Shown piece by piece: positions 8,345-34,769 of a DNA stretch of 38,575 bases. Position 1 is the stretch's first letter; every line of letters starts with the position of its first letter. Under the pieces are notes generated by a model, which saw nothing but the letters and a program-made list of their open reading frames with translations, had not been told where the DNA came from and searched no databases. The position numbers were made by a program, and so were the translations under genes. The stretch lies in assembly GCA_002269645.1 (NCBI GenBank), contig NIVC01002981.1:1-38575 (forward strand). Direction: 5' to 3'. The DNA is from Macrostomum lignano (lineage: Eukaryota).

Positions 8345-10618
8345 ATGAGTTCTGAGAAACCGGCCGATCAACTGGAAGCTGCAGCCCAGAGTGGCGATGT
8401 TGATTCTGTTAAAAAGTTTTTGGCCATTCTCGCTGATTCGGCAGGTCAGGAGCAGACTCTGGAGAAAGTTATCAAGATCTCCACAAAAGCCGGGCACGCG
8501 GAGATGGTCTCCGAGCTTTTAAAATATGCACCTGATTCCGAGTTCAGAGATCGCTACTGCAGAACTGCGATTCAGACTGCCAATGTGTATGACCGCGAAG
8601 AGATTGTAAAGGAAAGCCTACCTGCAGTAACTGATGCTGATGTCTTGGACCAGTGCCGGCAATCCGCAGTTGAGTGCTTCGCGAGAAACGGAAGAGAATC
8701 CGCTGTTATGGAGATCCTCAAAGCTGTTCGCGGCTCGCCAGTTGAGAACGAGTGCCTCCGATTGGCCACATATGGAGCCGCATCACGGGGCCATAAGAAG
8801 CTCGTCTCCGAATTGATTCAGGCTGCTGCGGATGCGACTAGGCGGAATGAGGTATTCTGGGAAGGAATCCGAACTGCTGCAACTTTTGGCCACAACGAAA
8901 TTGTTTCTGAACTTCTTCAAAGCTTTGGGCATAACGCGGTCCAAGACCAGCGCTATAAAGAAATAGTCGGTCAGGCAGTAAAGAACGGGCATAAGGTAAT
9001 TGCGGATGAACTAATTGCAGCTGTTTCAGATGGTGCCATCAAGGATTCATTGCAAAAAACTGCCCTTTGGGAAGCAGCGAAAACAGGACGCCATGAGATG
9101 CTAGCTGGATTTCTTCCTGTGTCTGACTCGACAACCAGAGACAAGCTATGCGTCTCTCTGGTTCGGCTATCTGTGTCCAGCGGACACCCTGCTACGGCAT
9201 ATGAGCTGGCAAAAACGGTAAGGGATGCAGAGTGCAAAGACCAGTGCTGCGAAATCGTGATTGCGGATGGATGCAAGCAAAGCTGGAGGGACACAATTGC
9301 GGACGCGCTTGAACTTGTTTCCGACTCGAAACGTAAGGAAAGGCTCTATAATTATATCGTGTTGACGGCCACAAGAAACGGTTGGAGGGAACTGCTAACC
9401 CGCCTACTGCAAACAGCGAGCCATCCCAATCTCAGAGATCGATGCTGCAAGGAAGCCACTTTAGTCGCTGCAATGAAGGTCACGTGGAGATTCTGTCTGA
9501 GCTTCTCAATTCCGTCAGCGATCCAGAGATGAAGAATAAATGCTACCGAAAGGGGATCACGGGAGCTGCGATGTCTGATCAAAAGGAAGCTTTGGCGCTG
9601 TTGCTTCACACAATTACTGATCAGCAAGTGAAAGATCGCTGTTGCATTAAAGCTGTAGGTGTCGCCGCAAGGAAAGGCCATGAATCGTCTTTGTCTCAGC
9701 TGCTTGCAGCCATCGCCAATCTGATTCCAAAATACAATCCTACAAGGATGCCACTATCTGTGCCTCTGCTGATGGTCGATCAGAGCTGGTGACAAAGTTG
9801 CTACAGGAGATCACGGATCCCGTTGTCAGAGCTGAGTGCTGCAGCGCTGCAGTATCGCGGGCTGCCTTGTCCAGCCATGTGCCGACCATTGTTACACTCT
9901 TAGCTGCACTGGATGACTCAAGGGCAAAACTTGAGTGCCTCAAGGAAGCCGTTGCTAATGCCATTCTGGATGGGCGAATGCACTTTTTTAGTGACTTGCT
10001 GCAAACTGTTCCGCCTGAATTGCGACACCAGTACGTGCAAATTGGCGTTCGCACCTCAATTGAAAACGCTCGATCTGAAGCGCTGACTGTTATACTGAGA
10101 GGGCTGAGCGATGTCCAGGACCCGACGCTGCAGGGTTGCAAGCCGCCAGTGAGCATGTCAGACCCCGCACTTCTGCGACTGCTAAATGGAGATGCAGTGA
10201 AGCGCCAAGCGGAGAACCTGGCTCTTTTGGCCAAACTGCATCCTGAGAAGGGTCGCCACGCTGCTCTGCTAAAAAGCATTGAAGCTGGTCACGTGTCCCT
10301 TGCCGTTTCCCTGCTGCCATACATGGCTCGCATTGACTCCAGCGATGCTCAAGGAATCACCGCTCTGATGCTTGCTGCCCGCCACGGCCATGACCAGATT
10401 GTTCATGCCGTCCTTGCCATACTGGCTGATCCAGCCGCTGTGAACGCGCAAGACAACGAAGGATTCACAGCTCTTTCAATGGCCTGTCGTGCCGGACATG
10501 TCCGAGTAGCAAAGTACCTGATGGACGCAGGGGCGGAATTGAAGCCCAGGGACGTTCAACTGGCTTCTGAAGGCGGCCACGCGGATTTTCATGCCTTTTT
10601 GCTATGGAAACTAAACGG
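8345..10618 (+). CDS. Exon 1 of predicted ankyrin-repeat / cGAS-like receptor (cGLR) fusion: about 16 atypical ANK-like repeats plus 3-4 canonical ANK repeats. Contains two apparent 1-bp deletions (about 9477 and 9721).
   Basis: Recurrent about 35-aa AAxxGHxExVxxLL pattern across ORFs 8345-9532, 9382-9792 and 9789-10622. Canonical repeats DAQGITALMLAARHGH and DNEGFTALSMACRAGH. Perfect donor GG|GTGAGT at 10619. Confidence 0.8.
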
Positions 10619-10782
10619 GTGAGTCTAAAGCGAAAGCATGTCTGCCTCGGGTGTTTCAGTTTCTGTGGTCTTCACTACGATTGGTTTGTTAAGAAATCCT
10701 CTCAGTATTCGTTTATGTGGCACAGCTTCTGCCTGACTAATTGTTTAATATTTTAATTTTTGCACTTTAACGTACTTTTCAG

Positions 10783-10833
10783 GTGTCCAACGGAAACAAT
10801 TCCTGAAATAAAATTCGACTTGCAGCAAATAAG
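10783..10833 (+). CDS. Predicted 51-nt micro-exon 2 (phase 2/2) encoding (G)CPTETIPEIKFDLQQI(S)
   Basis: Acceptor ACTTTTCAG ends at 10782 and donor AG|GTAAGC starts at 10834. The only open frame is the one required by the flanking phase-2 junctions. Confidence 0.7.
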
Positions 10834-11195
10834 GTAAGCTGAGACAGTGCTAACAGAATTTCGTTCATTGTATTACATTAATTTCGCATATTGCAGCAAA
10901 TGAATATTGCATTGGCTGCGTAAAATCTATTGCAGTTACTGAAGAGCTGTTAAAAATGCAGCCAAGCCACCCCCATAGTTTCAAGCCCATATTACTCCGC
11001 CCAACGTACATTGGCATTGACAAGCCAATGAATGTAGCAGAATAATGAACGCATCTAATTCGCTTAAACTAAGGCTCTAAGCTAATCGAACCGCTACCCA
11101 AAATAGAAGACAACTACCCTCTGCTTAGGTGCACTGCAAAAATATAAATTCGGGGTAAATTTTAAGCATAATTAATTCAGTGCTTAAATCTGTAG

Positions 11196-11593
11196 CATGA
11201 GCAGCGTGCTAAGTCTGCAAAAATTATCGCTAAAAACTTTCAGAGATGACCCGAACGAAGATCAAACACTGAGCATTGCGCTGCATAAGCTGCTCAACTC
11301 TGCAGGATTTACCCAGCAACGAGTTGTATTTCAAACGCGAATGGCTGATTTCCTTCAATCGTTGGCGAAGCTGCTCACAAAGAGTGAAATTGTGATGACT
11401 GGCAGCTTCGCTGACGGATGGGGCAACAACTTGGTAAAGCTAAACGGCAGAACCGCTGCTGACTCCGACATTGACTGGACTGTCATCGTTCCAGGCGTGA
11501 CACTGCACCTGCAGGGAGGTTGCGCTTGCAGCGGAGCAAGTATAGACCGGCTTTCGGTCGACGAGGGGCACGTGGTCTTGGAGGTTGCTGCTG
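11196..11593 (+). CDS. Exon 3: N-terminal half of a Mab-21/cGAS-like nucleotidyltransferase domain
   Basis: Acceptor CTGTAG ends at 11195. Motifs MTGSFADG (GS at 11401) and DSDIDW (11461-11478) match the hG[S/G]...DhD signature. Donor G|GTGAGA at 11594 (phase 1). Confidence 0.85.
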
Positions 11594-12377
11594 GTGAGAT
11601 TCTGAGGAACTGTATTTGCCTAATATGTGATGGGCTGGATGGTAAATCCATGTGATCTTACTGTTTCAACTTTATGACAGAAGACGAAAGTCCTGAGATC
11701 TCTTTTCTCATTAGACTATAATGGCACATCCGTATTATTTATTGAAGGGTTCTTCCTCTACCCTGGTATAAAGTGTTTTTACATGTTTTTATCTCAATAA
11801 ACAGGTTTGACTTTGGTGCGTGTTCTGATATCTACCCTCGTATATTAACTAATTCCAATCGACTAAATAGTACAGTCCTAATTTAAACTGTCTCATAACA
11901 ATCAAGACTGCTCTATATTGTACCTAGCTATCATTGTCTCTTGCAAAGCAGTAAGTATGCGAGTAAATTCATCTCTACCGCACTTCCAGATATAGGATAG
12001 GAAGTTTGTAGAAAAGACCCGTGAGCATAGGCAGGCGCACTGATCAAACAGGGACCAAAAACAAAACAGTTGAGGTGGTGGCCGCTATGAAAATGGAAGT
12101 AAAAACATACTACTCAGCACATTCAAGCCACGAGCGTCAAGGTTGGGAAAACTCCTGCTTCAGGCAACACCGACAGGTGGCAAGGAGAGTGCAGGGAGGA
12201 CCTGTTTTTAATCTGGTTCAGAATAATGTACGAGGTTTATTTTTAAGCCCAATTCATCACGTTTTAGTACGACTCATGCATGCCCAGTTGGAAATTTTTT
12301 AGCAAGGGGAATACGTCTTCCAGCGCAGGTCCTAGCTTTATGCATCGTCCAACCACTCGTCCAACCGCTCATTTCAG

Positions 12378-13798
12378 GCAGCTCGCCTGCCATTGCGGCC
12401 GATGCGTGCGGCATGCGGCCTGCCATGGACACTTGCTATGCCTTTCAGTGCTGCAGCGAGTTCTGCGCAGACCGCTGCTCAGTACTGCTCAGCGACCACG
12501 AGAAGGTCCACCTGGTAAGGGCTACCAGGCCCAACTCAAACAGCGATCTAAGAGTCAGCTTCAGTTTTCACGAAAAGAAGATTATTCGGCAACTGAATAC
12601 CATCCAAGGACAGCTCTTCATTCTCCTCAAGTTTGTCTGCAAGAGGCTGCTGCCACGTCTATGGCGAACGCAGGGCCTCAAGACGTACAATGCAAAGACT
12701 TTGCTTTTTTTCATCATGGAGAGGCACAGACTCACCGAGCATGTCTGGCAGCCTGAGAATCTGATCTCACTGTTAAAGGAGTCCTTGAATCTGATGCTGC
12801 AGTTCATGACAGACAGCCCGGACCCTGACATTTGTATGCCTCACTTCTTCATGCCGAAAGCCCCTCTTTTTGTGAAGAACGCTGGAATCGGTGGAAATTA
12901 TCTCGGGACCAAACGCAGGATAGCGGAGAAGCTGTTCGAGTTGAGGAAGGATGTGAATCAACTCTATCAATCCATCAGCGCGCACGTGCGCCCTTTGCAG
13001 TCCCGCAAATTCTACTGCCACCCATTCACCCTTTTGCCGCTGACGCCGTGTCTCTCCTTGGCTGAAGTGGAGAAGCAGAAAGTGGATACCATAGTTTACG
13101 TGCACTACGGAGCGCAAATCTACAACTTAGTTTTTGCTGCTATTGTTGAGCTGCAAGCGGATGGTTTTGACAAGAACGCATTTGCTAAACGGGTCTGCCT
13201 CCTGCCGCACAACTGCTGCGATACAGCCAAACTGTGCCTGATGGTGATGGCTGAACTGAAGGTCGGAAATGAAGCGGAGGCTAAGAAACTGGTGAGTACT
13301 TTTACTCACCACCCCGTGCAGAGTGGCTGGGATGCCACGGACTCCATCTCTTGGGATGAATTTTTTCGGGAATTTCCGAGACATAACTTTGCATGGAGAT
13401 TCTGCTTTGCCTGGGAGCCCAATAACCCGGCGTTGAAGTTTGACTTCCTGCCGCATTCAACAAGACACCTCATCGCGGTGAAATCATCCGGCCAGTCCTC
13501 TCACCTTTACATCAATTTCCGCTGCCTGTGGTGGAGCCTAGTGTTTGAGACCCAGCCTCTCCTGGGTGCACTCTTTGTGGAGAGGTGGCTGAAGGAGCTG
13601 CGTGAGGATTTTGAGGACGCAGAGTTTATGGAGTTGGAGACTGTATATCACATTTGCCTGAAACTGGAGCTACAGAAGCATGCGCAAGAAGGCTTAAGAC
13701 TGATGGAGCAGCTGGTGCGGGACCAGAAGGCAGGCTTGGCGAGAGGCGAGGCTGCTGATGAGGAAAAGTTTGAAAGCCTCAAAAGTTTAAACGATTAA
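12378..13798 (+). CDS. Exon 4: third catalytic Asp, Mab-21 C-terminal lobe and an unannotated C-terminal extension
   Basis: Acceptor CATTTCAG ends at 12377 and is in phase with exon 3. Motifs MDTCYAF, VHLV, LRVSFSFHEKKII, LKTYNAKTLLFF, WQPENL and CMPHFFMPKAPLF match Mab-21 consensus elements. Stop TAA with an overlapping AATAAA. Confidence 0.88.
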
Positions 13799-14745: not shown

Positions 14746-15209
14746 GCTGATTTTAATGGTGATTTGATCTTCAATTTTTTTACTTTTTCTTAAAGTTGAT
14801 ACAAACATTTGTCTACTTAATGATGATTAACGTTGAACGAGCTATACACTTTCAGATTCAGCTTCCGTTTTTACTTGTGCTACTGACTGAATGGCTTTGC
14901 TGCCCAAATTGCCCCAAATTTGCTTCTGTATACTGATCTCTATTCGTATACAATACAGACCGACTTACAGACAAGCTGATGGCCTCGAACTCCGATTGTG
15001 TCCTGACTTATTTCCTGCCTAATGCAAGCATTCCTATATTTAGGTCATTAGATTCCTGGCGGCCCTCCATTTCGATTTAAGTGCACCCCAATCTAATTTT
15101 GACAGCTTTAATTACCATTGATATCCGTCTGTCTGACGGATCTGGTCAAGACCCGGCTCCGGATGTTACCCAGTCAGCGCTTTTGATAATACTCGAGGCG
15201 TGTAACGCC

Positions 15210-15314
15210 AATATTAATAATAATAAAAAGAATATTAACAATAATAATAATATTATTAATATTAATAATAGTAATAGTAATAATAATAATAATAATAATA
15301 ATAGTAATAGTAAT
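15210..15314. repeat. Imperfect (AAT)n microsatellite
   Basis: AATAATAAT/AGTAAT runs, seen as poly-Asn in ORF 15081-15317. Confidence 0.95.
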
Positions 15315-15640
15315 TGATTTCACTAGCCTCAATGGGCCAGATGTGCAACCGACAGCTCAGCCGCAGCTATTGCGTCTTACATCTGAAGGCTGCATACGGC
15401 TGTTCAGTCCAGGGACAGTTGCCAGTTGCTTAAGTGACCGTCTCCCCTCTGCGAGACCCCACGCTGGCACTCCAAACCCATTTACTCAAGCAGAAACAGA
15501 AGAAAAAAGCTTGTGGGCAATAATAGTATTCATTGCTTGCTTGACCATCTACTCGGTTCCCTTAGGACTATGTTTCGACGTGCCTTTTCTTCCAAAAATT
15601 CAACCTTCCGTTTCAAATTCCAGAATCCGCCTGCAATACA

Positions 15641-18538
15641 ATGGCTGCAGCTCCAATGGAGAGTGCCGAAGCCACATCGAAAATCCAGTTTGCAGTCTCG
15701 CTGCTCACCCACGGCATGAATCAGATACTCAAGACGGCCTTGGGACTGAATACCACTCTGGATTTCAACAACTCGCTAAAAATGATTGTAGATGAGCTGC
15801 AGAAACTCTTTCCTGACCCGGCTGTTCAGAGACAACTGCGTGGATCCTTGGAGAGAGCCAGGGCCGTTAGGAACCAGTATTCTCACCACGATTTCGATGC
15901 AAACCGGTTCGAGCATGATATCGAGTGCTTTCTAAAGCTGGCGGAGTTGATGGGGCTGAGCGACTGCAGAAGAGAAATATTGAAGTTTGCTGGCGTTTCT
16001 GGCGAAGACTGGGAGAAGCTGAAGGTCGAGGGGAACAAGCATTATGGAAATAAGCGATGGGCGGATGCCATGGACTGCTACACAAAAGCCATCAGAATCA
16101 ATGCAAATTTGGCCATTTTGTACTCAAACCGAGCTCTGTGCGAGCTCAGACTATCCAAATTTAACCTGGCCCGTGAAGATGCGGAAGATGCAATCCAGCT
16201 GGACCCAAAGCCGGTAAAATTCTATCGAATTCTGTCGGAAGCTCTTGCAAAGCTTCGGCTCTTTAAAGAAGCATTGGCCATCTGCAACGGAGGCTTGGTC
16301 CGCGATCCCAGAGATGATATTCTTCTTCTGAGGAAGAGAGATTGTCAAGCTTATTTAATTGATGAAAGAGTGAAAAAGCAGCCTGTTTGTGGTGGTCTTG
16401 GGGAGCTGAATGATCCTGAAGTTGCCCGCCACTCTCAAATGAACATAATTCAACAATCTTCCAATGTTTCTCCTAGCGATGTCAGCCCAATGAACGATTA
16501 TCAAAGCGAAAGCTACACCGAAATTGTTGAGGCTCATCAGATCCTGCAGTCCGGCAGGGGCAATGTTGCTGAAGAGCAGAGGGCGCTTAGAATATTCCAA
16601 TCAATTGCAACGCGTGGGTGCGCAAATGGGCTGTACAATTTAGCTGTGATGTACAAAGACGGCAGAGCTGGGCTGGCTCGTGACTCAAAGAAATATATCA
16701 ATTTGTGCGACCAAGCCGCCGGGCAGAAGCCCTATCTGGATGATGGCTCCGCGATTTTTCGGAATGTTGGCGTTGCTGAAGCGGAGAACTCAATCGGAAT
16801 GGCTTACAGAGACGGTCTGACCGTTGATCAAGACAATAAGCTCGCCTTCGAATGGTTTGTGAAATCCGCTCAGCACGGCTGCCCGTCAGGTATGAACAAC
16901 CTCGGCGTGGCACTCGAAAACGGCACCGGCTGCAAGCAAAACTTGGCGTCAGCGCGCTGGTGGTACCAGGAGTCTGCCAATCTGGGCCAGGCTGAGGCCC
17001 GATACAACCTCGCACTTATGCTTGCGGAAGGGCGGGGAGGACCCGTGGACACAGTAAAAGCGACGGAGCTGCTTCAAGCCGCTGCGGATCAGGGCCTCCC
17101 AGGATCTCTGAGAGCTCTGCAGAAGCTTTCACAGAGCGGCGCTCTTGGTGCGAGAATTAATGAATCAAAAAAAGTTATTATGCAAAGGGTAGAAAAAAAC
17201 GACAAAGAAGCACTGCTTCTTCTGGGCGAAAACTACATGAGGGGTAAAGGCGGATTCCGAACAAATTTGAAGCAATCGGAGGAATACTTCAAAAAAGCTT
17301 CGGATATGGGTCACGAGAAGGCTACTGTTGCCCTGGGCAGCTTGCTTCTGCAGCAGAATAGAAGCGAAGAAGCAGTGTTTTTTCTTTCAAAGGCTGCTGA
17401 ATGGGAAAATGCTGATGCGCAATGGATTCTGGGCCGTCTGCTGTCACTGGGGCAAGGCTGCAAGCGAGATTTGGATCAAGCACGCAGATGGATGATTCGA
17501 TCCAAGCGAGAAACTCCAGATGTCATCAGTGACGTGATTGAATTTTTCAATGAAATTATAAAGTTTGAAGGCATCAATGGGCTTTCGCAAGAAGGACTTT
17601 CATGCGACGAGAGATGTGAGAGATACTGCGACTCTTCGGTGCCAGATCCATCGCTGAGAGATGCAATTAAAAAGCTGCGCAAGTATTTTACACCTCGACA
17701 AGCAAGTCCAGCACCAGGTCTTTGCTTTCATGATTTGAATCATGAGATCAACGTGATGGCCGAAAGGGTAATCACGGGGTCTGAGACGGCAAAAAAGTAT
17801 TTTGTTGGCCTGGGCCTTCTGGCTGATTCCTACACAGCCCTGCAAGGCGGCGAGCATTCTGAAGCATTTCATCTGTTTCGGAAAGCTGGAAGTACCTGGC
17901 AGCCGCTTGATATTGATGCTTTGACTTGGGAAAGTTTCTACTCTGCTGCAACCAAAGCCTTTAGGAACGATGAAAGAGATGCCGCTGCACTGTTTGTAAT
18001 CATGCGCTACCATCAGACACGTCAACTTAGCAGCAACGCCGAGCTACTTGAAATGACAAAGACGTGCACCGAACTGGACCCAGCTGTCGCTGACTACCAC
18101 ACCTTCCTGATCCAAATGTACTGCACTATTGGTGACTTTGATAGCTGTCTAAGAGCTATCGACCAAGCTCGGGAGCTTGAGAGTGAGCCAGCGTGGCTTT
18201 ATGAACGAGCGACGTGCTTGAGAATGCAGGGTCGGAATAACCCAAAAGCAGTCATTGAAGCCTACCAGAAATTCATTTCTTCAAACGAGCCCGACAATCG
18301 CAAGGTCCCGGAGGCCCTCTATTGCATCAGTCGTGAATATATTCAATTGATGGACGAGCGCAAGGCAAGGGAGTACTTTGAGAAGGCACTGCGCGCTGAG
18401 AGTGCAGAGGTGAGGCTTCCGTGCTTTCCACCAATCAAGGATTTCCCTCCAAAGAATCAGGTTAAATCCATGCTCGAAGCCATGCATCTGGCAGCAGATT
18501 TGGAGCGCCTATTAAAGACTCAGCTTCTTCTAGGCTGA
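15641..18538 (+). CDS. Intronless 965-aa protein: N-terminal HEPN-like domain (Swt1/DZIP3-type, RxxxxH), 3 TPRs, SEL1-like repeat array and C-terminal TPR region
   Basis: RAVRNQYSHHDF at aa 74-85 (RNQYSH at nt 15869-15886) within a helical 115-aa domain. STI1/SGT-type TPRs (LKVEGNKHY...AMDCYTKAI, LYSNRALCELRL). SEL1 repeats (AENSIGMAYRDGLTVDQDNKLAFEWFVKSA, GMNNLGVALENGTGCKQNLASARWWYQESA). Confidence 0.88.
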   Translation: MAAAPMESAEATSKIQFAVSLLTHGMNQILKTALGLNTTLDFNNSLKMIVDELQKLFPDPAVQRQLRGSLERARAVRNQYSHHDFDANRFEHDIECFLKLAELMGLSDCRREILKFAGVSGEDWEKLKVEGNKHYGNKRWADAMDCYTKAIRINANLAILYSNRALCELRLSKFNLAREDAEDAIQLDPKPVKFYRILSEALAKLRLFKEALAICNGGLVRDPRDDILLLRKRDCQAYLIDERVKKQPVCGGLGELNDPEVARHSQMNIIQQSSNVSPSDVSPMNDYQSESYTEIVEAHQILQSGRGNVAEEQRALRIFQSIATRGCANGLYNLAVMYKDGRAGLARDSKKYINLCDQAAGQKPYLDDGSAIFRNVGVAEAENSIGMAYRDGLTVDQDNKLAFEWFVKSAQHGCPSGMNNLGVALENGTGCKQNLASARWWYQESANLGQAEARYNLALMLAEGRGGPVDTVKATELLQAAADQGLPGSLRALQKLSQSGALGARINESKKVIMQRVEKNDKEALLLLGENYMRGKGGFRTNLKQSEEYFKKASDMGHEKATVALGSLLLQQNRSEEAVFFLSKAAEWENADAQWILGRLLSLGQGCKRDLDQARRWMIRSKRETPDVISDVIEFFNEIIKFEGINGLSQEGLSCDERCERYCDSSVPDPSLRDAIKKLRKYFTPRQASPAPGLCFHDLNHEINVMAERVITGSETAKKYFVGLGLLADSYTALQGGEHSEAFHLFRKAGSTWQPLDIDALTWESFYSAATKAFRNDERDAAALFVIMRYHQTRQLSSNAELLEMTKTCTELDPAVADYHTFLIQMYCTIGDFDSCLRAIDQARELESEPAWLYERATCLRMQGRNNPKAVIEAYQKFISSNEPDNRKVPEALYCISREYIQLMDERKAREYFEKALRAESAEVRLPCFPPIKDFPPKNQVKSMLEAMHLAADLERLLKTQLLLG

Positions 18539-19014
18539 GTGGAGCTCAGTGCGCAGCCTGCGGCCTGCCCGATGCCCACTTCCGCTGCAGCAGATGCAAG
18601 GACGCCCACTACTGCGACCGGGTTTGCCAGCGGAAACATTGGAAGGAACACAAAGAGTTATGCGTGAAAATATGAAAGACCTATCTATTTAGCAAGTATT
18701 TTTGCAACATTAGACCTCTAGGACTCATTGCTAAAAGTGCAAGGGGTGGTCTCAAGTGCAGAAAAGGGGACCTAAATGTTTAACGATTTAACTACTGAAG
18801 TATTTTAACATTTTGAACCAAATGGAAGCTGGGGGGGGCTAAAACATAAAGTGATGAATTTCTCAAATGCTTTGGCTACAAGACCGTAAGGTTCCGTGTT
18901 CCAACCTGAGCCCAGGAGGTGCCCCATGCAATGGGCACTTGCCCTACCGGAAAGCGCCCTCCGTTAGTAAAGGAGACTAAATTAACTAATTGGCGACTGT
19001 AAGAGTTAATGGCT

Positions 19015-19433: not shown

Positions 19434-20428
19434 CGAGGGGTGTCCAAAAAGTAGTGATACTTTTGACCGTGGCTCTCGTTCTGTAGCTTCCTGTGATTTA
19501 AAATTTTATGAACTGATAGCGGAAAATCTCTTCTACAGACTGCTTTTTGAATTTTTAAAATTGATACTAGAGAACAAAAGTTATACCCACGAAAGTAACA
19601 GTACCTGTACCATAGAGTTACACAAATTATATCGAAATTTATAGTAGTTGACTTCTGCACTCATTCATTAAGAAGGCATCGATAAATGTCTTGTTTAAGC
19701 AATACCAAACCCAATTGCAAAATGATGCTCACTGTGACTGACTGAAATTTATCTATGGACGGGATCAGGCGCAGAAAAATAAAGCATTAAATGCATTACT
19801 TTACTTGCAAACAGAGGATCGCTTGCATTTTGCGATTCGTTCATGATTTCATTGCCCATACTCGACAACACACATGAATGTGCACTCAGTTGTTGCTCAG
19901 CAAAGTACCATCTTCACTCTTTGGGGCGCTGGCCATGGTGCCTCAGAAATTCACGCAAATCTTTGCTCTGCGCACGGATCCTCTGCGGTCAGCAAAATGA
20001 CAGTTTATCGATGGATGGAGCAGTTCAGCGAGGGAAGGATTGACTTGGCAGATCAGCATTGGACGGGGCGGCCATACGTTCATCGACCTGATGTACTGGC
20101 GGACTCCATTCTGAATCTTCTTGACGAGGACTCCCGAATGACCATTAGAGAGATCGCTGACAGGTTGGACAAGCCGAAATCAACAATTCATCGAAGCTTA
20201 CTCGGCATGGATCTCGTGAAGCTCAGCCTATAATTTGTGTAACTCTATGGTACAGGTACTGTTACTTTTGTGGGTATAACTTTTGTTCTAGCTGGTATCA
20301 ATTTTAAAAATTCAAAAAGCAGTCTGTAGAGGAGATTTTCCGCTATCAGTTCATAAAATTTTAAATCACAGGAAGCTACAGAACGAGAGCTACGGTTAAA
20401 AGTATCACTACTTTTTGGACACCCCTCG
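19434..20428 (+). mobile_element. Non-autonomous Tc1/mariner element, 995 bp, TIRs about 200 bp, TA target duplication
   Basis: TA|CGAGGGGTGTCCAAAAAGTAGTGATAC at the left end and GTATCACTACTTTTTGGACACCCCTCG|TA at the right. TIRs span about 19434-19631 and 20229-20428. Confidence 0.93.
19874..20233 (+). pseudogene. Truncated mariner transposase ORF with only the bipartite HTH DNA-binding region (119 aa)
   Basis: ASEIHANL...TVYRWMEQF...GRP (HTH1 and linker) and MTIREIADRLDKPKSTIHRSL (HTH2). Stop at the start of the right TIR, no DD(D/E) domain. Confidence 0.85.
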
Positions 20429-21928: not shown

Positions 21929-22153
21929 TGTAGCGAGCAACTCTAGCTGGTTGTTGCGAGTGTTAGTTAGCCACTCAAAAAGGTGGAGAAATAGAATGTG
22001 CCTGTGCCTGTATATTTATTGTCTGGTAGAACACAGATTTCCGGTTCATTGAGTGCGCGTTGGGATGTGCTCGAGCAGAGCGAAGTGGATAGGCTGGATG
22101 GCGGTCACGGAGTGCAAACTAGGTGCCCGAACTGCCTGCCTGCGCATGCTACA
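21929..22153 (-). mobile_element. 3' LTR (225 bp) of the gypsy element
   Basis: Termini TGTAGC...GCTACA. Polypurine tract (AAACGAGGGA on the minus strand) abuts 22153. AATAAA on the minus strand at about 22015-22020. Confidence 0.75.
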
Positions 22154-24708
22154 TCCCTCGTTTGGTGGATTGGAACCCGGGGTGGGGTTGGGTACAACGT
22201 TGGGTTCAAGTTACGCGCGATCGAGTAATCAGTGTCAGTCATTAGAGTCAATGATCAGTCCTTGCTGCTGTTCCGCCAGCTGTCAGATGTCCAGAGCCTT
22301 TCGCCGGTCGCCCTCTTCGTAGCGTTTCGGCGTCTCCTTGGCCTGTCGGGGGTGCGGCCTGTTGGCGAGAGGGACGTCCTGGTTGCCGGTTGGCTCGGGC
22401 GGGCCGGTTAATTGGTTCATCCGGCCGGCTGTCCTGTCCACTGTCGCGTTCTCCGGGGTCACCCGGCCACTCGTCGGCTGCCTGGGAGACTCGCTTGACG
22501 TGGGTGGCGTGCCTGGAGCACCTCTGGCATGCACGTTGAAGCTGCAGGGTGTTGCCGCGGACTTCTGTCACGGTCCATGGCGAGGCCTCGAAGAAGGGGT
22601 CGGTCTTGCTGCGGTTGGTGAGCCGGCGGAGTACGAGGTCGCCTACGGTGATCTGGTGGTCGGTGGCGCCCCTCTTGCTGTCGGCGAAGGCCTTCATCCG
22701 CTCCTTCGCCCTGTAGTCGTGGCCGCGGACGGTCTGTCGCCTGGCGTCAACCGGCCGGGAGTGGCGCAAGCTGGGGATCGTGTCGTTGAGCTGTCGGCCG
22801 AATAGCAGGTCGGCTGGGGCCATGCCGGTTGCTGCGTGCGGTGTTCGCCGGTAAGCAGTCAGGTAGTCGTCCAGTGCCGCCTGCCAGTCGCTGCCTTCCA
22901 GAATCGCCGCTCTGATTGCCTTGTTGAGGCCTCGGTTGCATCGCTGTACGAGCCGCTCGTGCTACGAGTTGTGAGAGCTCGTGCCGCAGGCCGTGCAGGC
23001 TGCGAGTTGGCTATCGAGTTGCCACCGATGGGACCGCAGCCCGGATACGGCGGCTTGGATCGCCTTGTCGCCTGCGGCGGCCACCTTGATCGTGTCGAGG
23101 CTGATGCTGTTCGGCGCTGCTGCCTGTGCTGTCATTGCGATGTAGGCCGTGTCGAGATCCTCGCCCTCGTTGTTCGGTGGTGTTGGACGTGGCTGGCGGC
23201 TCAGGACATCTGCCGGGTTATCTGCCCCCGGCTGGTAGATGACTTTGATGAAGGCCTTGGAAACGTCTACTTCGGAGAAATAGGTGGAGCCGGCCATCTC
23301 GTCGGTGACTTCTTCGAATGTCGGTATTGGCTGCTTTTCTGGAATTACGTACTTATTGACGTCCCTCAGGTCCTGCGTGATGCGGATTTCGCCTGGCGAG
23401 GCCTTTGGAACGACCACCATGCGTGAACTCCAAGCGCTGGGCCCCGTCACTCGCTCCAGGATGCCGGCTGCTAGCTGGCCCTTCAGCTCCTTTTCCACGG
23501 CGGTTCGAAGATGCACCGGAACTCGAGACGGAGGGTGGCAGACTGGCACCGCTTCTTCCTTCAGCTGGATGCTGACTGAGACGCCCTTGATGCAGCCGAT
23601 TCCTTGAAACCTGTCGCTGAACTCCTTCATGATCGATGACAGTCGCAAGTCTTGCGGAAGGTGCAGGTCCGGCAGTGAGAGCTGTCTCGGCCTGCGGTCC
23701 GACCCTCAGCATCCCCATCTGCGTGCTTGTCTCGCGGCCTAGGATGGTGATGCAGTCCTCTCTGATGACGATGAAGCGCACTGATCTGGCCAGCGGGTGT
23801 CAGGGGCCTCGCTGCTCCGAGAGGATAGACCCTCGTGTGCGTGGGATGAAGCGCCCGCTCGGGTGCTCCCGTTAGATGAAGGGTCCGCTGGCTCAGCACG
23901 TTGCAGCTCGCACCGCTGTCGATCAGGACGGGTACGTTCGCGCCGTTGATGACCGCTTTGAAGGTGGCGCTTTTGCGGCTGGGGTCGAGGCTGGAGAATA
24001 CCGCCTCCGCCAGGTGCGCCACACGACTGCTGGTTCCTATGGCTCAGGCTCTGCCATGTTTAATGCGTGCGCGGCCGCTTAGGCAGGCCTTCGCCAGGTG
24101 GTGCAGCTTGCCGCAGTTGCTGCAGCGCTTGCCTTGGGCCCGGTTGCAAGTGCGGTTGCCGGGCTCTCCGCACCGCAGGCATTTGTCGGCCGGGCTGGCT
24201 GGCGGGCGCCTGGTGGGGCGCTTGTCGCGAGCCGCATGCACTTCTTCAGCTGGTCCGGCTGCCGAGCGCTCCATGATTGCCGCTTGCTGGCTGGCTGCTT
24301 CGTTTGTTCTCGCCAGCTGGAGGGCATCGGGGAGGCTGATGTTGGGCACGTTGAGCAGCCGCTTTCGGAGGGATTCACTGCGGCAGCAGGCGACGATCTG
24401 GTCGCGGATGAGGGACTGTGGCGCAGCTCTCCGAACTGGCAGGCCTCAGCCGCGTTGCACAATCGGTTGTACCAGCTGTCGATGCCTTCGCCGTCTAGCT
24501 GCGTGCACTGGCAGAATTGGTACCGGGTGAACACCACATTGTCGCGTCCTTGAAAGTGCTGAGTTAGCGCCGCTATGAGTGAGTCAAGCGTTTGCTGCTC
24601 CGGCTGGTCAGTGGCGGGACGCGTCTGTGAGATCTCTTTAAAGATGTCTGCAACCTCTTTTCCCGCGGTATACAGGAGGATTTCCTGCTTCTGGGCGTCG
24701 TCCGAGAT
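21929..24708 (-). mobile_element. Ty3/gypsy LTR retrotransposon, 5'-truncated and internally deleted (gag, protease, partial RT, partial integrase, 3' LTR)
   Basis: Gag (QEILLYTAG, VFTRYQF, CxxC zinc knuckles including CSNCGKLHHLAKAC), protease LIDSGASCNV (DSG at 23920-23912), RT N-terminus (WSSRMVVVPK...IRITQDLRDVNK), RNase H end (YQPGADNPADVLSR) and integrase end (YRRTPHAATGMAPADLLF). Confidence 0.93.
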
Positions 24709-31707: not shown

Positions 31708-32475
31708 GTGCGCCGGCCTGAACGAATGACGAATGAGGTTTTAAGGATATACTAGCAATCAGCGTCCACCGTTGGGGAGCCAACAAAGAATGAAATAAAA
31801 AATTGGATAAACTACATGTAGCTTCTGACCTCTAAGCCGTGAAATCTCAGCAATTCCCCCCTTCCGTAAGCCCTGACGTCTCAGCACCCCTCCTCCCGTA
31901 AGCCTTGAAATCTGCATTTGCATTCGGCATTCAGACAGCCTTTTTTGATATGGCTAAAACGGCCCTTTTTAGGCTCATATACCTTTATGATGTTTTTTGG
32001 TTTTATCCCACATAAGTAGAATTTCAGGAATTTCAGAATTTCAGGAAACATCGATGTTAGAAACGGCCATTCCCTACTGGGAATTTTTGGTTATCAGTTA
32101 CCACCTAGGTATGGCTTGGAAGTTAAGGTGTTGTTGCACTCTCTAGGAAATCTTTTTTTCAATTCGATTGGCTTTTTTAAATTCAACAGATCAAAGAATC
32201 TGTGATTCGGAAGATTTTTCGAGGAAATTTAATCGAAATTGTAAGGATTAAAAAACTTGCGTCTGGCTCTGACATTCAAACAGATTTTTGCTAACACTGA
32301 AACGGCCCTTTTTAGGGCTCAAAAATATTATTTCTATTTTATCCCAAAAGTGAGACTGTTAATGTTTGCGGATTTCAATTTTAAGCGAAGCATCATTTTG
32401 GGATCTTTTGTTCTAATGTTTTTAACAGGTCTCATGGCCGCTATGTTACTGCGGTTAAATTTATCCCATTCGCAG

Positions 32476-32694
32476 GGCCCGCGACTCGCCGTGGCCGTGC
32501 TGGCCGTGGACCGCAATAACCGGCGCATTGATGCCTACCAGCCACACTACCTGACGCAGACTCTGCACTCCCTGTTGGCCTCCGCTGACCGGGACAAACG
32601 GCTCTACGGCGGCCGCTTCCGCTCCCTGCAGGTGGCCGTCTGCAATGCCGAACAGCAGCCGCACCGGTTCGCCGAGGCCAAGCGCTGGGAGCAG
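32476..32694 (+). CDS. PGAP4: PGAP4 homologue, exon 2
   Basis: Acceptor CCATTCGCAG. Encodes GPRLAVAVLAVDR...HYLTQTLHSL...VCNAE, compared with PGAP4 PWLVITIITVDR...HYVLQVV...LCNVE. Donor CAG|GTCTGT, phase 0. Confidence 0.8.
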
Positions 32695-33310
32695 GTCTGT
32701 CTGTAGCTGGAGTGTATCTGTCTGTAGCTGGATTGTCTGTAGCTGGAGTGTCTGTCTGTAGCTGGAGTGTCTGTCTGTAGCTGGAGTGTCTGTAGCTGGA
32801 TTGTCTGTAGCTGGATTGTCTTTAGCTGGAGTGTCTGTCTGTAGCTGGATTGTCTGTAGCTGGAGTGTCTATCTGTAGCTGGATTGTCTGTAGCTGGAGT
32901 GTCTGTCTGTAGCTGGATTGTCTGTAGCTGGAGTGTCTGTAGCTGGATTGTCTGTAGCTGGAGTGTCTGTAGCTGGATTGGCTCTCTGTAGCTAGAGTGT
33001 CTGTCTGTAGCTGGATTGGCTCTCTGTAGCTAGTGTCTGTCTATAGCTGGAGTGTCTGTCTGTAGCCGGAGTGTCTGCCTGTTGCTGGAGTGTCTGTCTG
33101 TAGCTGGAGTGTCTGCCTGTTGCTGGAGTGTCTGTCTGTTGCTAGAGTAGCTTCAGGGTCTGTAGATTGGGTGCCTGTAGCTGTGATCTTTGTAGCACAG
33201 ATATCTGTAATGTAGCTGGAGTGCCTGTAGGTAAGTATTTAGCTGTCTGTTGGTCAGTCTGTAGCTGTCTGTTGGTCAGTCTGTAGCTGTCTGTTGGCAG
33301 TCTGTAGCTG
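32695..33310. repeat. Degenerate tandem repeat (GTCT)nGTAGCTGGA(G/T)T filling PGAP4 intron 2
   Basis: 15-19 bp variable units run from the donor GT to about 20 nt before the acceptor. Confidence 0.92.
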
Positions 33311-33331
33311 AGCACCCCCTCGCATCTCCAG

Positions 33332-34090
33332 GCGCTGCCGGTGCTGTCCCGCCAGCACCCGCCCGAGCTGCCGCTGCCCGTCAGCGCCAGCGCCATCCGC
33401 TGCCGGCCGAAGGCGGACTGGGCCTGGTGCCTGGGCGCCCTGGCCGCCGCCAGCCCCGACGCGGACTGGCTGGCCGTGGTGGAGGACGACCAGCTGGCGA
33501 GGCTGGACGCGGTCTCGGCCCTGCACGACATCATGGACTCGAAGCTGGCCCGCAGGTACGGCGACCAGCGCCTGGCCCGGGTGGGCCTGGTGCACCTGCA
33601 CTCGCCGGCCAGCGAGCTCCGCTACCGCTGGCTGGACGCCGGCACCTGGCTGGAGCTCATGCTCATCGGCGGCTGCATCGGCGGCGCCTGCTTCATGCTG
33701 TACTACCGGATGTTCTGCAACCCCATGCTGTTCTTGCCGAACCTCTGCCTGGCCAGCTTCCTCTTCATCTACTCGCTGGCGGTGGCCGTGGCGGTGGGCC
33801 GCCCCAACTGGCTGGCCGCCCGCCACGCCCTCACCCGCATCTACAGCCTGGACGAGCCGCTGTCCGCCAACTTCTCCGCCGTGCTGCTGCCGCGCCAGTC
33901 ACAGCTGCTGTTGAACGGCTCCGGCGGCCGCGCCTCGCCGCTGACTGGCTGCTGGGGCGCCGAGCAGGTGGACGCGGCGATGCGGTCGGCCGGCAGGCGG
34001 GTGCTGGCGGTGTACCCCAGCCTGCTGCGCCACGTAGGTCTGTACAGCGCCCACTCTGGCGGCCTGCTGGCGCCGCACCTGCTGGACTGA
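33332..34090 (+). CDS. PGAP4: PGAP4 homologue, exon 3 (joined CDS 1269 nt, 422 aa)
   Basis: Acceptor CATCTCCAG. Motifs DWAWCL and WLAVVEDD (PGAP4 YVLMVEDD), two TM helices, and VYPSLLRHVGLYS (PGAP4 VEPNLVKHIGLFS). Confidence 0.88.
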   Translation, partial: ALPVLSRQHPPELPLPVSASAIRCRPKADWAWCLGALAAASPDADWLAVVEDDQLARLDAVSALHDIMDSKLARRYGDQRLARVGLVHLHSPASELRYRWLDAGTWLELMLIGGCIGGACFMLYYRMFCNPMLFLPNLCLASFLFIYSLAVAVAVGRPNWLAARHALTRIYSLDEPLSANFSAVLLPRQSQLLLNGSGGRASPLTGCWGAEQVDAAMRSAGRRVLAVYPSLLRHVGLYSAHSGGLLAPHLLD

Positions 34091-34769
34091 CCGGCCGGGC
34101 CGTTCACGACATTCGCTTGCACATTCCCCAAGCTGGCAGGCTTCATTCATTTCTGCCAGACATTCAAATTCCCTGTAGCTTCATGCACCAGCCGTATTTC
34201 ACTTCCCCAATGCTGTGCAAGCAATTTCATGAACTCCAAAATCCACAGTTGTTGAAGCCAATCTCCAAAACCTGCACAGAGCCCACAGATCGCACAATAT
34301 TTAACATGCTAATCTTGTGCGTTCTTTTTCTATCCGCACTACTTACATAGAGCGGTTCAGTAGCCACTTTTGCTTTTTTTATTGCTTTGTACCGGGGCGA
34401 TTGAATACTGTAGCAATTTTAGTTAGTAGAAATATTGCAGCCTTTTTATTGTGACTGTGAAACAGTTTGGTTCATTCCTGATTTTTATTTATTTATTGCC
34501 ATGGCTTTGAGCTGAGTCTGTCAGCAGCTGATTTGATCACCCAAATTCAGTTAATACTGCCTTCACTATTGTCACGTGACAATGCAAAATTTGACCGGGC
34601 CGAATATTTTATTTGTGTTTTTTGCAGAATAAACTGGTGTGTAACTCTCTCCGGACTGCTTATTCTCCGTCCTGGTTGCGCGGAGCTCTTCAACTTTAAA
34701 GCCATAACTGAAACCTGTTTGTGTATTTAAGCAATTCATTTTTTACCATGTACTTGACTAATAGGCTGG

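What the first reader, a model, noticed from the sequence alone, without database searches (positions are those of the whole stretch)
15641..16000. Intact HEPN-type RxxxxH motif at the N-terminus of a TPR/SEL1 protein
Seen: R77-N-Q-Y-S-H82 preceded by an amphipathic helix (LRGSLERARAV) and followed by ...FEHDIECFLKLAELMG. Established: RN(x)3H in this helical context is typical of Swt1-like and DZIP3-like HEPN RNases, which work as dimers. Inference: a latent RNase gated by the TPR and SEL1 solenoids. Ordinary SEL1/TPR annotation would miss this domain.
Basis: partly seen in the sequence, partly recalled or inferred. Interest (0 to 1): 0.72.

Follow-up and report, generated by a model that had tools for sequence, protein, structure and literature searches.

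The report
Flatworm TPR/Sel1 protein with HEPN domain
A gene of the flatworm Macrostomum lignano really does begin with a small HEPN domain (probably RNA-cutting) that routine annotation misses, but the domain belongs to an already catalogued family (Swt1-like HEPN), and this copy looks like a truncated, loosely constrained duplicate.

Summary
RNQYSH occupies aa 77-82 (nt 15869-15886) of an intronless 965-aa ORF (15641-18538, + strand). The window is Macrostomum lignano DNA.

The motif alone proves little: Rx4H is expected about 1.1 times per shuffled protein. Its context is what counts.
- **Conservation:** across 111 domain instances, R is kept in 93, N/H after it in 94, H in 98, and an upstream Asp (D41) in 95.
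- **Profile match:** the window protein alone scores 15 bits against Pfam HEPN_Swt1 (cut-off 27.5). However, 14 of 19 aligned relatives match at E<=0.1 (best 3.4e-10), and other relatives exceed the cut-off.
- **Link to a typical member:** the family profile aligns at 94% hhalign probability to a bacterial HEPN_Swt1+DUF499 protein, with R, N, H and D in register.
- **Structure:** AlphaFold2 (pLDDT 88.7) places the motif at the end of a long helix and the start of the next loop, as in HEPN. Foldseek found no HEPN structure, so the fold test is inconclusive.

It is Swt1-like, not DZIP3-like. RNase activity and "gating" by the repeats remain untested.

Architecture: HEPN, then a TPR of the Hsp70/Hsp90 co-chaperone type, Sel1 repeats, TPR-like helices, and a MYND finger that is out of frame in this copy. 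The family is patchy across eukaryotes and tandemly expanded in this flatworm. Verdict: a new member of a known kind, of moderate-to-low interest.

The parts
15641..18538 (+). Intronless ORF of 965 aa (stop included): HEPN, clamp-type TPR, Sel1 repeats, C-terminal TPR-like helices. A Macrostomum lignano gene, 99% identical to NCBI model BOX15_Mlig026018g1 over the 690 aa that the model covers.
15641..16006 (+). HEPN domain, Swt1-like family (aa 1-122). AlphaFold2 helices at 3-34, 42-51, 53-56, 60-81, 87-103 and 107-117.
15761..15766 (+). D41-F42, the only invariant columns among the 19 relatives. D41 aligns with the conserved Asp of the bacterial HEPN_Swt1 protein P0200. It is the probable helix-2 acidic residue of the HEPN active site.
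   Evidence: PMC3710099
15869..15886 (+). R77-N-Q-Y-S-H82, the Rx4H catalytic motif. It sits in the last turn of helix 60-81 and at the first residue of the following loop.
16010..16330 (+). Three-repeat TPR domain (aa 124-230). Closest to the Hsp70/Hsp90-binding TPRs of SPAG1, HOP/STI1, RPAP3, CHIP and PP5. K128, N132, N163 and K193 are invariant in the family; R196 is invariant but one residue closer to K193 than in PP5 and SPAG1.
16628..17503 (+). Sel1 repeat region (about aa 330-621). Pfam Sel1 E 3e-37, five stretches.
18086..18433 (+). C-terminal TPR-like helices (Pfam TPR_8, best stretch aa 891-920) ending in the family-conserved RLPCF..FPPK segment.
18503..18510 (+). Site where this copy lacks 7 nt that the sister copy L001 has. 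In L001 the main frame runs on into the MYND finger. Here the frame shifts and ends at the TGA at 18536-18538.
18550..18663 (+). MYND zinc finger (Pfam zf-MYND 42 bits, E 9e-11), encoded in a different frame from the main ORF. Its own frame stops at 18673-18675. As the sequence stands it is not part of the 965-aa product.

Best explanation
The first ~120 residues of this M. lignano protein are a HEPN domain of the Swt1-like (Ava_2192/Abi2-related) family. The full active-site set is retained: D41, R77, N78 and H82.

The most likely function is a metal-independent endoribonuclease effector. It probably becomes active when two HEPN domains come together. It sits at the head of a long alpha-solenoid: a TPR of the Hsp70/Hsp90 co-chaperone type, then Sel1 repeats, more TPR-like helices and, ancestrally, a MYND finger. 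The solenoid would supply partner or ligand binding and so control when the HEPN domains pair. This is the same effector-plus-repeat-sensor logic as RNase L or Ire1.

The gene belongs to a small, patchily distributed eukaryotic family: flatworm, bdelloid rotifers, Daphnia, oomycetes and a blastocladiomycete fungus. In M. lignano the family is tandemly expanded and turns over quickly. The window copy has lost its MYND finger to a frameshift.

Shown: domain identity, residue conservation, architecture, distribution and the state of the copies. Inferred: RNase activity, dimer activation, chaperone-tail binding and any role in immunity or stress. The confidence of 0.6 is for the whole statement. 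For HEPN_Swt1 family membership alone I would say about 0.85, for catalytic RNase activity about 0.5, and for control by the repeats about 0.35.
For: - Motif and ORF are present as described.
- Conservation of R, N/H, H and D in 19 full-length relatives and in 111 domain instances.
- Pfam HEPN_Swt1 hits 14 of 19 relatives at E<=0.1, best 3.4e-10. P0135 scores 40.2 bits and P0209 30.8 bits, above the 27.5 cut-off.
- An exhaustive profile search of 1.84 billion representatives gives only 94 hits at E<=0.001. One is bacterial P0200, which has HEPN_Swt1 at 68 bits plus DUF499.
- hhalign of the family against P0200 gives 94.4% probability and E 8.7e-8. It aligns RNQYSH with RNRHAH and D41 with D.
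- The AlphaFold2 model has pLDDT 88.7, with the motif at the end of helix 60-81 and the start of the loop. That is where the HEPN superfamily paper places it, at the end of helix-3 (PMC3710099).
- A Rotaria protein, P0037, has the same TPR+Sel1+MYND body but a DZIP3-type HEPN at the head. This argues that the head position is an HEPN effector slot.
- Other members of this HEPN subfamily are fused to LRRs (P0208) or occur as a tandem pair followed by a hydrophobic tail (P0155).
- The TPR is closest to Hsp70/Hsp90 co-chaperone TPRs, E down to 8e-24. The clamp-position residues are invariant in the family.
- L003 carries three tandem copies, all with RNRYSH intact.
Against: - The window protein alone does not reach the Pfam cut-off: 15 bits against 27.5.
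- Foldseek against PDB and BFVD gave no hit better than E of about 1, and no HEPN structure among the 50 best matches listed for each library.
- A profile search of PDB sequences found nothing significant.
- No biochemical data exist for any member, and no paper was found.
- Swt1 itself, the family's namesake, is thought to have an inactive HEPN (PMC3710099).
- Two M. lignano paralogues have lost the catalytic residues: P0002 has RDRHSR and P0004 has TSRLST. Catalysis is therefore dispensable for some members.
- Q83, present in 94 of 111 instances, is H in this copy.
- The window copy and its sister copy L001 each carry a frameshift. They differ by 11 non-synonymous and 4 synonymous changes, dN/dS about 0.8. 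This copy may be decaying.
- The fifth clamp residue, R196, lies one position closer to K193 than in PP5 or SPAG1.
Confidence: 0.6

Rival explanations
1. The domain is a genuine HEPN, but it acts without cutting RNA. It would serve as an RNA- or nucleotide-binding module, or as a dimerisation module, on a chaperone-linked scaffold. Comparable proposals exist for the HEPN of Swt1 proper and for sacsin.
For: - The superfamily paper infers that the Swt1 HEPN is inactive and serves in sensing.
- Paralogues P0002 and P0004 lack R and/or H, yet keep the rest of the protein.
- The TPR and Sel1 parts are much better conserved than the HEPN part.
- The TPR resembles Hsp70/Hsp90 co-chaperone TPRs.
Against: - R, the polar residue after it, H and the upstream Asp are kept in about 85-92% of 111 instances across distant eukaryotes. 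That degree of conservation is the expected signature of an active site.
- The superfamily paper calls the eukaryotic Ava_2192-like branch 'catalytically active', in contrast to Swt1 proper.
Confidence: 0.2
2. This particular copy is a decaying duplicate (a pseudogene or a truncated allele). Its HEPN motif is intact only because the duplication is recent. Any function resides in other paralogues.
For: - A 7-nt gap relative to L001 puts the MYND finger out of frame.
- The sister copy has a 1-nt deletion at window position 16385 that breaks its own ORF.
- There are 11 non-synonymous and 4 synonymous differences, dN/dS about 0.8.
- Another paralogue, P0004, has both a lost motif and a C-terminus that reads like a frameshifted MYND.
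Against: - A 965-aa ORF with no internal stop is still open.
- A MYND-less paralogue, P0003 (961 aa, intronless), exists with an intact motif. Loss of MYND need not mean loss of function.
- The indels could be assembly errors.
- Fifteen substitutions are too few for a firm dN/dS.
- A candidate 89-nt GT..AG intron (18461-18549) would restore the MYND frame. This was worked out by hand from the sequence and was not tested.
Confidence: 0.3
3. The RNQYSH string is a chance occurrence in a generic helical N-terminal extension that is not a HEPN domain.
For: - Rx4H is expected about once per protein of this composition.
- Foldseek finds only generic helical bundles.
- The single-sequence Pfam score is below the cut-off.
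Against: - The conservation is position-specific.
- Relatives score above the cut-off against HEPN_Swt1.
- The hhalign match to P0200 is in register, with 94% probability.
Confidence: 0.04

Closest known systems
Swt1-like HEPN family (Pfam PF18731), Ava_2192 branch: bacterial HEPN + DUF499 AAA+ ATPase in restriction-modification contexts, with eukaryotic transfers to Naegleria, dictyostelids and Daphnia (Anantharaman et al. 2013, PMC3710099)
   Same: The family profile matches a member of this branch directly (P0200). The R-N-x3-H motif and the upstream Asp align. A Daphnia protein is among the relatives (P0153).
   Different: The 2013 survey lists the eukaryotic members of this branch as stand-alone domains. 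Here the HEPN heads a ~1000-aa TPR-Sel1-(MYND) protein. There is no DUF499 ATPase and no operon context.
DZIP3/hRUL138-type HEPN proteins of animals (Pfam PF18738)
   Same: These are animal HEPN domains fused to TPR and other repeats or adaptors, with lineage-specific expansions. One Rotaria protein, P0037, carries a DZIP3-type HEPN on the same TPR+Sel1+MYND body.
   Different: None of the 19 aligned family members matches PF18738. This is a different HEPN family.
Swt1 proper (PIN endonuclease + HEPN dyad, nuclear-pore pre-mRNA surveillance)
   Same: It shares the Pfam HEPN family name.
   Different: The window protein has no PIN domain and no HEPN dyad. The Swt1 HEPN has largely lost the motif and is thought to be inactive. 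Here the motif is intact.
RNase L and Ire1 (KEN-type HEPN RNases)
   Same: This is a comparison of working logic only. A repeat or sensor module controls pairing of HEPN domains, which then cut RNA without metal.
   Different: The HEPN family is different (KEN) and circularly permuted. Those proteins have a kinase or pseudokinase dimerisation module and ankyrin or lumenal sensors. None of these is present here.
Hsp70/Hsp90 co-chaperone TPR domains (HOP/STI1, SPAG1, RPAP3, CHIP, PP5, SGT)
   Same: Residues 118-240 match them at E 8e-24 to 1e-10. The K/N/N/K/R clamp-position residues are invariant in the family. The clamp positions are taken from my own knowledge of HOP and PP5.
   Different: The arginine is one residue closer to the second lysine than in PP5 and SPAG1. 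Binding of an EEVD tail was not tested. No known co-chaperone carries a HEPN head. Sacsin, which has HEPN, DnaJ and Hsp90-like regions, is the nearest thematic precedent (from my own knowledge).

Membership tests
HEPN superfamily / Swt1-like HEPN (PF18731) | Rx4-6H motif with a polar residue (N, D or H) immediately after the R | tested here: met
   R77-N78-Q-Y-S-H82. The definition is from PMC3710099.
HEPN superfamily / Swt1-like HEPN (PF18731) | The motif is conserved at the same position among homologues | tested here: met
   R in 18/19 and H in 17/19 relatives. R 93, N/H 94 and H 98 of 111 domain instances. Exceptions: paralogues P0002 and P0004.
HEPN superfamily / Swt1-like HEPN (PF18731) | Second conserved acidic residue upstream, in helix 2 | tested here: met
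   D41 is invariant in 19 relatives and present in 95 of 111 instances. It aligns to the Asp of P0200.
HEPN superfamily / Swt1-like HEPN (PF18731) | Significant profile relationship to bona fide members | tested here: met
   The window sequence alone is below the cut-off, 15.2 against 27.5 bits. However, 14 of 19 relatives hit at E<=0.1, best 3.4e-10. P0135 scores 40.2 bits and P0209 30.8 bits. The family profile hits P0200, which has HEPN_Swt1 at 68 bits, at E 8.7e-5 against 1.84 billion proteins. hhalign gives 94.4%.
HEPN superfamily / Swt1-like HEPN (PF18731) | [quoted passage not shown] | tested here: inconclusive
   The AlphaFold2 model (pLDDT 88.7) is all-helical. R77-S81 lie in the last turn of helix 60-81, and H82 opens the loop before helix 87-103. 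Foldseek found no HEPN structure: the best E was about 1 against PDB and about 0.7 against BFVD.
HEPN superfamily / Swt1-like HEPN (PF18731) | Metal-independent RNase activity that depends on R and H; active as a dimer or a tandem pair | not testable with these tools
   There is no multimer modelling and no biochemistry here.
DZIP3-like HEPN (PF18738) | Match to the family profile | tested here: not met
   No PF18738 hit for the window protein or for any of the 19 aligned relatives at E<=0.1. Only the more distant P0037 carries it.
Swt1 proper | N-terminal PIN endonuclease plus a dyad of HEPN domains | tested here: not met
   Pfam finds no PIN domain and only one HEPN region.
RNase L / Ire1 (KEN) | Kinase or pseudokinase domain next to a KEN-type HEPN | tested here: not met
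   No kinase or KEN hit. The resemblance is in working logic only.
Carboxylate-clamp TPR co-chaperones | Three-repeat TPR with the K/N/N/K/R clamp residues that bind an EEVD tail | tested here: inconclusive
   Strong sequence similarity to HOP, SPAG1, CHIP and PP5 TPRs. K128, N132, N163, K193 and R196 are invariant in 20 family members. R196 is offset by one residue, and binding was not tested.

The most novel reading that the evidence does not exclude
The HEPN-clampTPR-Sel1-MYND proteins are an uncharacterised class of eukaryotic stress or immune sensors. They are scattered across flatworms, rotifers, Daphnia, oomycetes and a blastocladiomycete fungus. In this reading, occupancy of a co-chaperone-type TPR by Hsp70/Hsp90 tails, or by a mimicking ligand, controls pairing of an active Swt1/Ava_2192-type HEPN RNase. 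The result would be an RNase L-like switch wired to the chaperone system instead of to 2-5A.
Probability: 0.12. Interest if true: 0.65.

Novelty: new member of a known kind. Interest (0 to 1): 0.33.

Why it matters
- **Annotation:** it corrects the annotation of a family now labelled only 'TPR/Sel1/MYND' or 'hypothetical'. The public model of the sister copy lacks the HEPN part altogether.
- **Architecture:** it shows that the Ava_2192-like branch of Swt1-type HEPN domains, listed in 2013 as stand-alone in eukaryotes, also heads large repeat proteins in several eukaryotic lineages.
- **Hypothesis:** the pairing of an apparently active HEPN with a chaperone-clamp-type TPR gives a concrete, testable idea about RNA cleavage coupled to proteostasis or defence.
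- **Limits:** HEPN domains fused to repeat sensors in expanded invertebrate gene families are an established pattern, so a specialist would not be surprised. This copy may not even be functional.

Tried and rejected
- **Word-index homologue searches:** searches with the N-terminal 127 aa alone and with the 19-sequence alignment both found nothing. Relatives were reached only through the full-length protein and the exhaustive profile search.
- **PDB by sequence:** phmmer of the domain gave only spurious repeats to designed 'Pizza' proteins. The profile search gave PDCD10 at E 0.14, which is not significant.
- **Structure searches:** Foldseek against PDB and BFVD returned only generic helical bundles at E of about 1 or worse.
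- **DZIP3 membership:** rejected.
- **Link to the upstream gene:** I considered a functional link to the upstream ankyrin + Mab-21-like gene, on the OAS/RNase L analogy. The paralogue loci L002 and L003 show no such neighbour. They show tandem copies followed by a PH-domain gene. The adjacency is therefore probably coincidental.
- **Possible intron:** I considered that the MYND finger is joined by an intron. Reading the sequence by hand, the only GT..AG pair I found that restores the frame is 18461..18549 (89 nt). The sister copy, however, reads straight through without any intron. A frameshift is the simpler reading. This cannot be settled without RNA data.
- **Literature:** no paper was found on HEPN+TPR+Sel1+MYND, on PITG_12794, or on HEPN in Macrostomum.
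Full report
**1. The observation**

The window carries an intronless ORF at 15641..18538 on the + strand, encoding 965 aa. Residues 77-82 read R-N-Q-Y-S-H (nt 15869-15886).

The motif alone is weak evidence.
- Shuffling the protein gives 1.1 Rx4H strings on average, and at least one in 68% of shuffles.
- The stricter R[NDH]x3H within a 122-aa stretch occurs in 1.8% of shuffles.

Whether the motif means anything therefore depends on homology and conservation.

**2. Source and relatives**

The full-length protein is 99% identical to an NCBI model from Macrostomum lignano. That model is only 690 aa long and starts at M276, so it lacks the N-terminal domain altogether.
- Five further M. lignano paralogues are about 50% identical.
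- More distant full-length relatives (29-43% identity) come from bdelloid rotifers (Didymodactylos, Rotaria), a EukProt transcriptome and metagenomes.
- Named cluster members add Phytophthora infestans PITG_12794, Aphanomyces stellatus, Daphnia sinensis and the blastocladiomycete fungus Paraphysoderma sedebokerense.

The family is eukaryotic and patchy.

**3. Is the N-terminus a HEPN domain?**

Pfam on the window protein finds TPR and Sel1 repeats. When the N-terminal 140 aa are scanned alone, HEPN_Swt1 (PF18731) appears at only 14.9 bits, E 0.034, against a cut-off of 27.5.

The evidence from relatives is much stronger.
- **Alignment of 19 N-termini (A1):** D41 and F42 are invariant, R77 is kept in 18/19 and H82 in 17/19.
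- **Pfam on the 19 members one by one:** 14 match HEPN_Swt1 at E<=0.1, best E 3.4e-10. None matches HEPN_DZIP3.
- **Exhaustive profile search of 1.84 billion representatives:** only 94 hits at E<=0.001. Several exceed the Pfam cut-off, for example P0135 at 40.2 bits and P0209 at 30.8 bits.
- **A textbook member among the hits:** P0200 is a bacterial protein with HEPN_Swt1 at 68.4 bits followed by DUF499. That is the Ava_2192 architecture described in the HEPN superfamily paper (PMC3710099).
- **hhalign of A1 against P0200:** 94.4% probability, E 8.7e-8. It aligns RARAVRNQYSH-HDF with EANDVRNRHAHDQPF, and LDFNNSLK with WDIQALIR. R, N, H and the upstream Asp are all in register.
- **All 111 domain instances recovered:** R is present in 93, N or H after it in 94, H in 98, D41 in 95 and Q after the His in 94. 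At that last position the window copy has H instead.

**4. Structure**

AlphaFold2 on A1 gives a confident all-helical model (mean pLDDT 88.7, pTM 0.80). The helices are at 3-34, 42-51, 53-56, 60-81, 87-103 and 107-117.

R77-S81 form the last turn of helix 60-81, and H82 opens the loop to the next helix. [quoted passage not shown]

The other structural tests did not confirm this.
- Foldseek against PDB and BFVD returned only generic helical bundles at E of about 1, with no HEPN structure among the 50 best matches listed for each library.
- A profile search of PDB sequences found nothing significant.

I therefore count the fold test as inconclusive, not as passed.

**5. The rest of the protein**

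- **TPR (aa 118-240):** it matches the Hsp70/Hsp90-binding TPR domains of SPAG1, HOP/STI1, RPAP3, CHIP, PP5 and SGT, at E 8e-24 to 1e-10. This segment is far better conserved in the family than the HEPN head. K128, N132, N163, K193 and R196 are invariant in 20 members. By my own knowledge of HOP and PP5, these correspond to the carboxylate-clamp positions. The arginine, however, sits one residue closer to the lysine than in PP5 and SPAG1.
- **Sel1 repeats:** about aa 330-621 (Pfam E 3e-37).
- **C-terminus:** TPR-like helices follow.
- **MYND finger:** most relatives end in one.

**6. State of this copy**

A MYND finger is encoded at 18550-18663 (zf-MYND 42 bits), but in a different frame from the main ORF, which stops at 18536-18538.

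The sister copy L001 lies on contig NIVC01002980.1 of assembly GCA_002269645.1. It is 98-99% identical over about 14 kb.
- **Near 18506:** L001 has 7 more nucleotides than the window and reads straight through into the MYND finger.
- **At window position 16385:** L001 lacks one nucleotide, which breaks its ORF after the TPR. This explains the truncated public model.
- **Within the CDS:** the two copies differ by 15 substitutions, 11 non-synonymous and 4 synonymous. With 2247 and 648 sites respectively, dN/dS is about 0.8. None of the substitutions falls in the HEPN segment.

So each copy carries one frameshift, and the pair looks close to neutral. The numbers are small, though, and the indels could be assembly errors.

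Other paralogues point the same way.
- L003 holds three tandem copies, all with RNRYSH intact.
- P0003 is intronless and lacks a MYND finger.
- P0002 (RDRHSR) and P0004 (TSRLST) have lost the catalytic residues. P0004 also ends in what reads like a frameshifted MYND.

This is birth-and-death evolution of a lineage-specific expansion.

**7. How it most likely works**

Shown: a Swt1-like HEPN domain with a complete active-site signature heads a clamp-TPR/Sel1/(MYND) solenoid.

The following rests on established knowledge of HEPN enzymes. The H and R of the motif are needed for the metal-independent RNase activity of RNase L/KEN, PrrC and RloC (PMC3710099). Two motif copies cooperate in active HEPN RNases (discussion in PMC10897365).

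From this I infer that the domain is an endoribonuclease that needs pairing, and that the repeats decide when pairing happens. They could do so by binding partners such as Hsp70/Hsp90 tails (TPR) or PxLxP-type ligands (MYND, from my own knowledge), or some unknown ligand (Sel1).

The following points fit an effector-plus-sensor protein of the conflict or stress type:
- a DZIP3-type HEPN occupies the same position on the same body in a Rotaria protein (P0037);
- relatives are fused to LRRs (P0208) or occur as tandem HEPN pairs (P0155);
- the gene is tandemly expanded;
- some copies have lost catalytic residues;
- recent duplicates evolve almost neutrally.

None of this is demonstrated.

**8. 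Comparison with what is known**

- **Member of:** the Swt1-like HEPN family, on its Ava_2192-like branch.
- **Not a member of:** DZIP3-type HEPN, Swt1 proper (no PIN domain, no HEPN dyad) or the KEN RNases.
- **Versus the 2013 survey:** that paper lists the eukaryotic representatives of this branch (Naegleria, dictyostelids, a Daphnia expansion) as stand-alone domains, and reports TPR fusions only for the DZIP3 family. The HEPN_Swt1-TPR-Sel1-MYND architecture is thus not in that paper, nor in any paper I could find.
- **Visibility in databases:** the architecture is already visible, since precomputed Pfam hits mark PF18731 on several relatives.

I rate it a new member of a known kind.

**9. 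Verdict**

| Question | Result |
|---|---|
| Observation | Confirmed |
| HEPN assignment | Supported (Swt1-like, not DZIP3-like) |
| Fold test | Inconclusive |
| RNase activity and gating | Untested |
| This copy | Truncated, possibly decaying |

Interest is moderate to low. The chaperone-clamp link is the one idea worth a bench test.

Noticed in passing
window 18466-18675: A complete MYND zinc finger (zf-MYND 42 bits) lies just past the stop codon of the main ORF, in another frame. The sister copy L001 has 7 more nucleotides near window 18506 and reads through into it.
   Followed up: yes
L001 around 5947 (= window 16385): The sister copy (NIVC01002980.1) lacks one nucleotide here, which breaks its ORF after the TPR. 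This explains why the public model BOX15_Mlig026018g1 starts at M276 and lacks the HEPN and TPR parts.
   Followed up: yes
window 8345-13798, + strand: The upstream neighbour looks like one multi-exon gene. It has ankyrin repeats (8345-9532 and 9789-10622), an ORF with a faint NTP_transf_2 hit (11197-11655, E 0.08), and an ORF with Mab-21_C exactly at the Pfam cut-off (12413-13798, 24.1 bits). It may be an ankyrin + Mab-21/cGAS-like nucleotidyltransferase sitting 1.8 kb from a HEPN gene. Paralogue loci L002 and L003 do not show this neighbour.
   Followed up: partly
window 19434-20428: About 1 kb that is present in the window but absent from the sister copy L001. It contains an ORF with Mos1/mariner-type HTH domains (19874-20233). 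This is probably a transposon-fragment insertion polymorphism.
   Followed up: partly
L003 10013, 14608, 19425; L002 1-2322 and 10001-12886: Paralogues sit in tandem arrays: three HEPN heads within 10 kb on L003, all with RNRYSH, each array followed by a PH-domain gene. Paralogues P0002 and P0004 have lost the catalytic R and/or H.
   Followed up: partly
P0037 (Rotaria sordida): This protein has the same TPR + Sel1 + MYND body but a DZIP3-type HEPN (PF18738) at the head. Two HEPN families appear to be interchangeable in one architecture.
   Followed up: no
window aa 83 (nt 15887-15889): The residue after the catalytic His is Q in 94 of 111 family instances. This copy and its sister copy are the only ones with H (SHH instead of SHQ).
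   Followed up: no
window 15081-15317: An AAT/AGT-rich microsatellite-like stretch, which translates as poly-Asn/Ser, lies about 320 bp upstream of the start codon.
   Followed up: no
window 22000-24500 and 32000-34500: Two GC-rich blocks (0.56-0.62) with strongly negative AT skew. The first overlaps a weak reverse-transcriptase fragment on the minus strand (22962-23648, RVT_1 E 3.6e-4). These are probably retroelement remnants.
   Followed up: no
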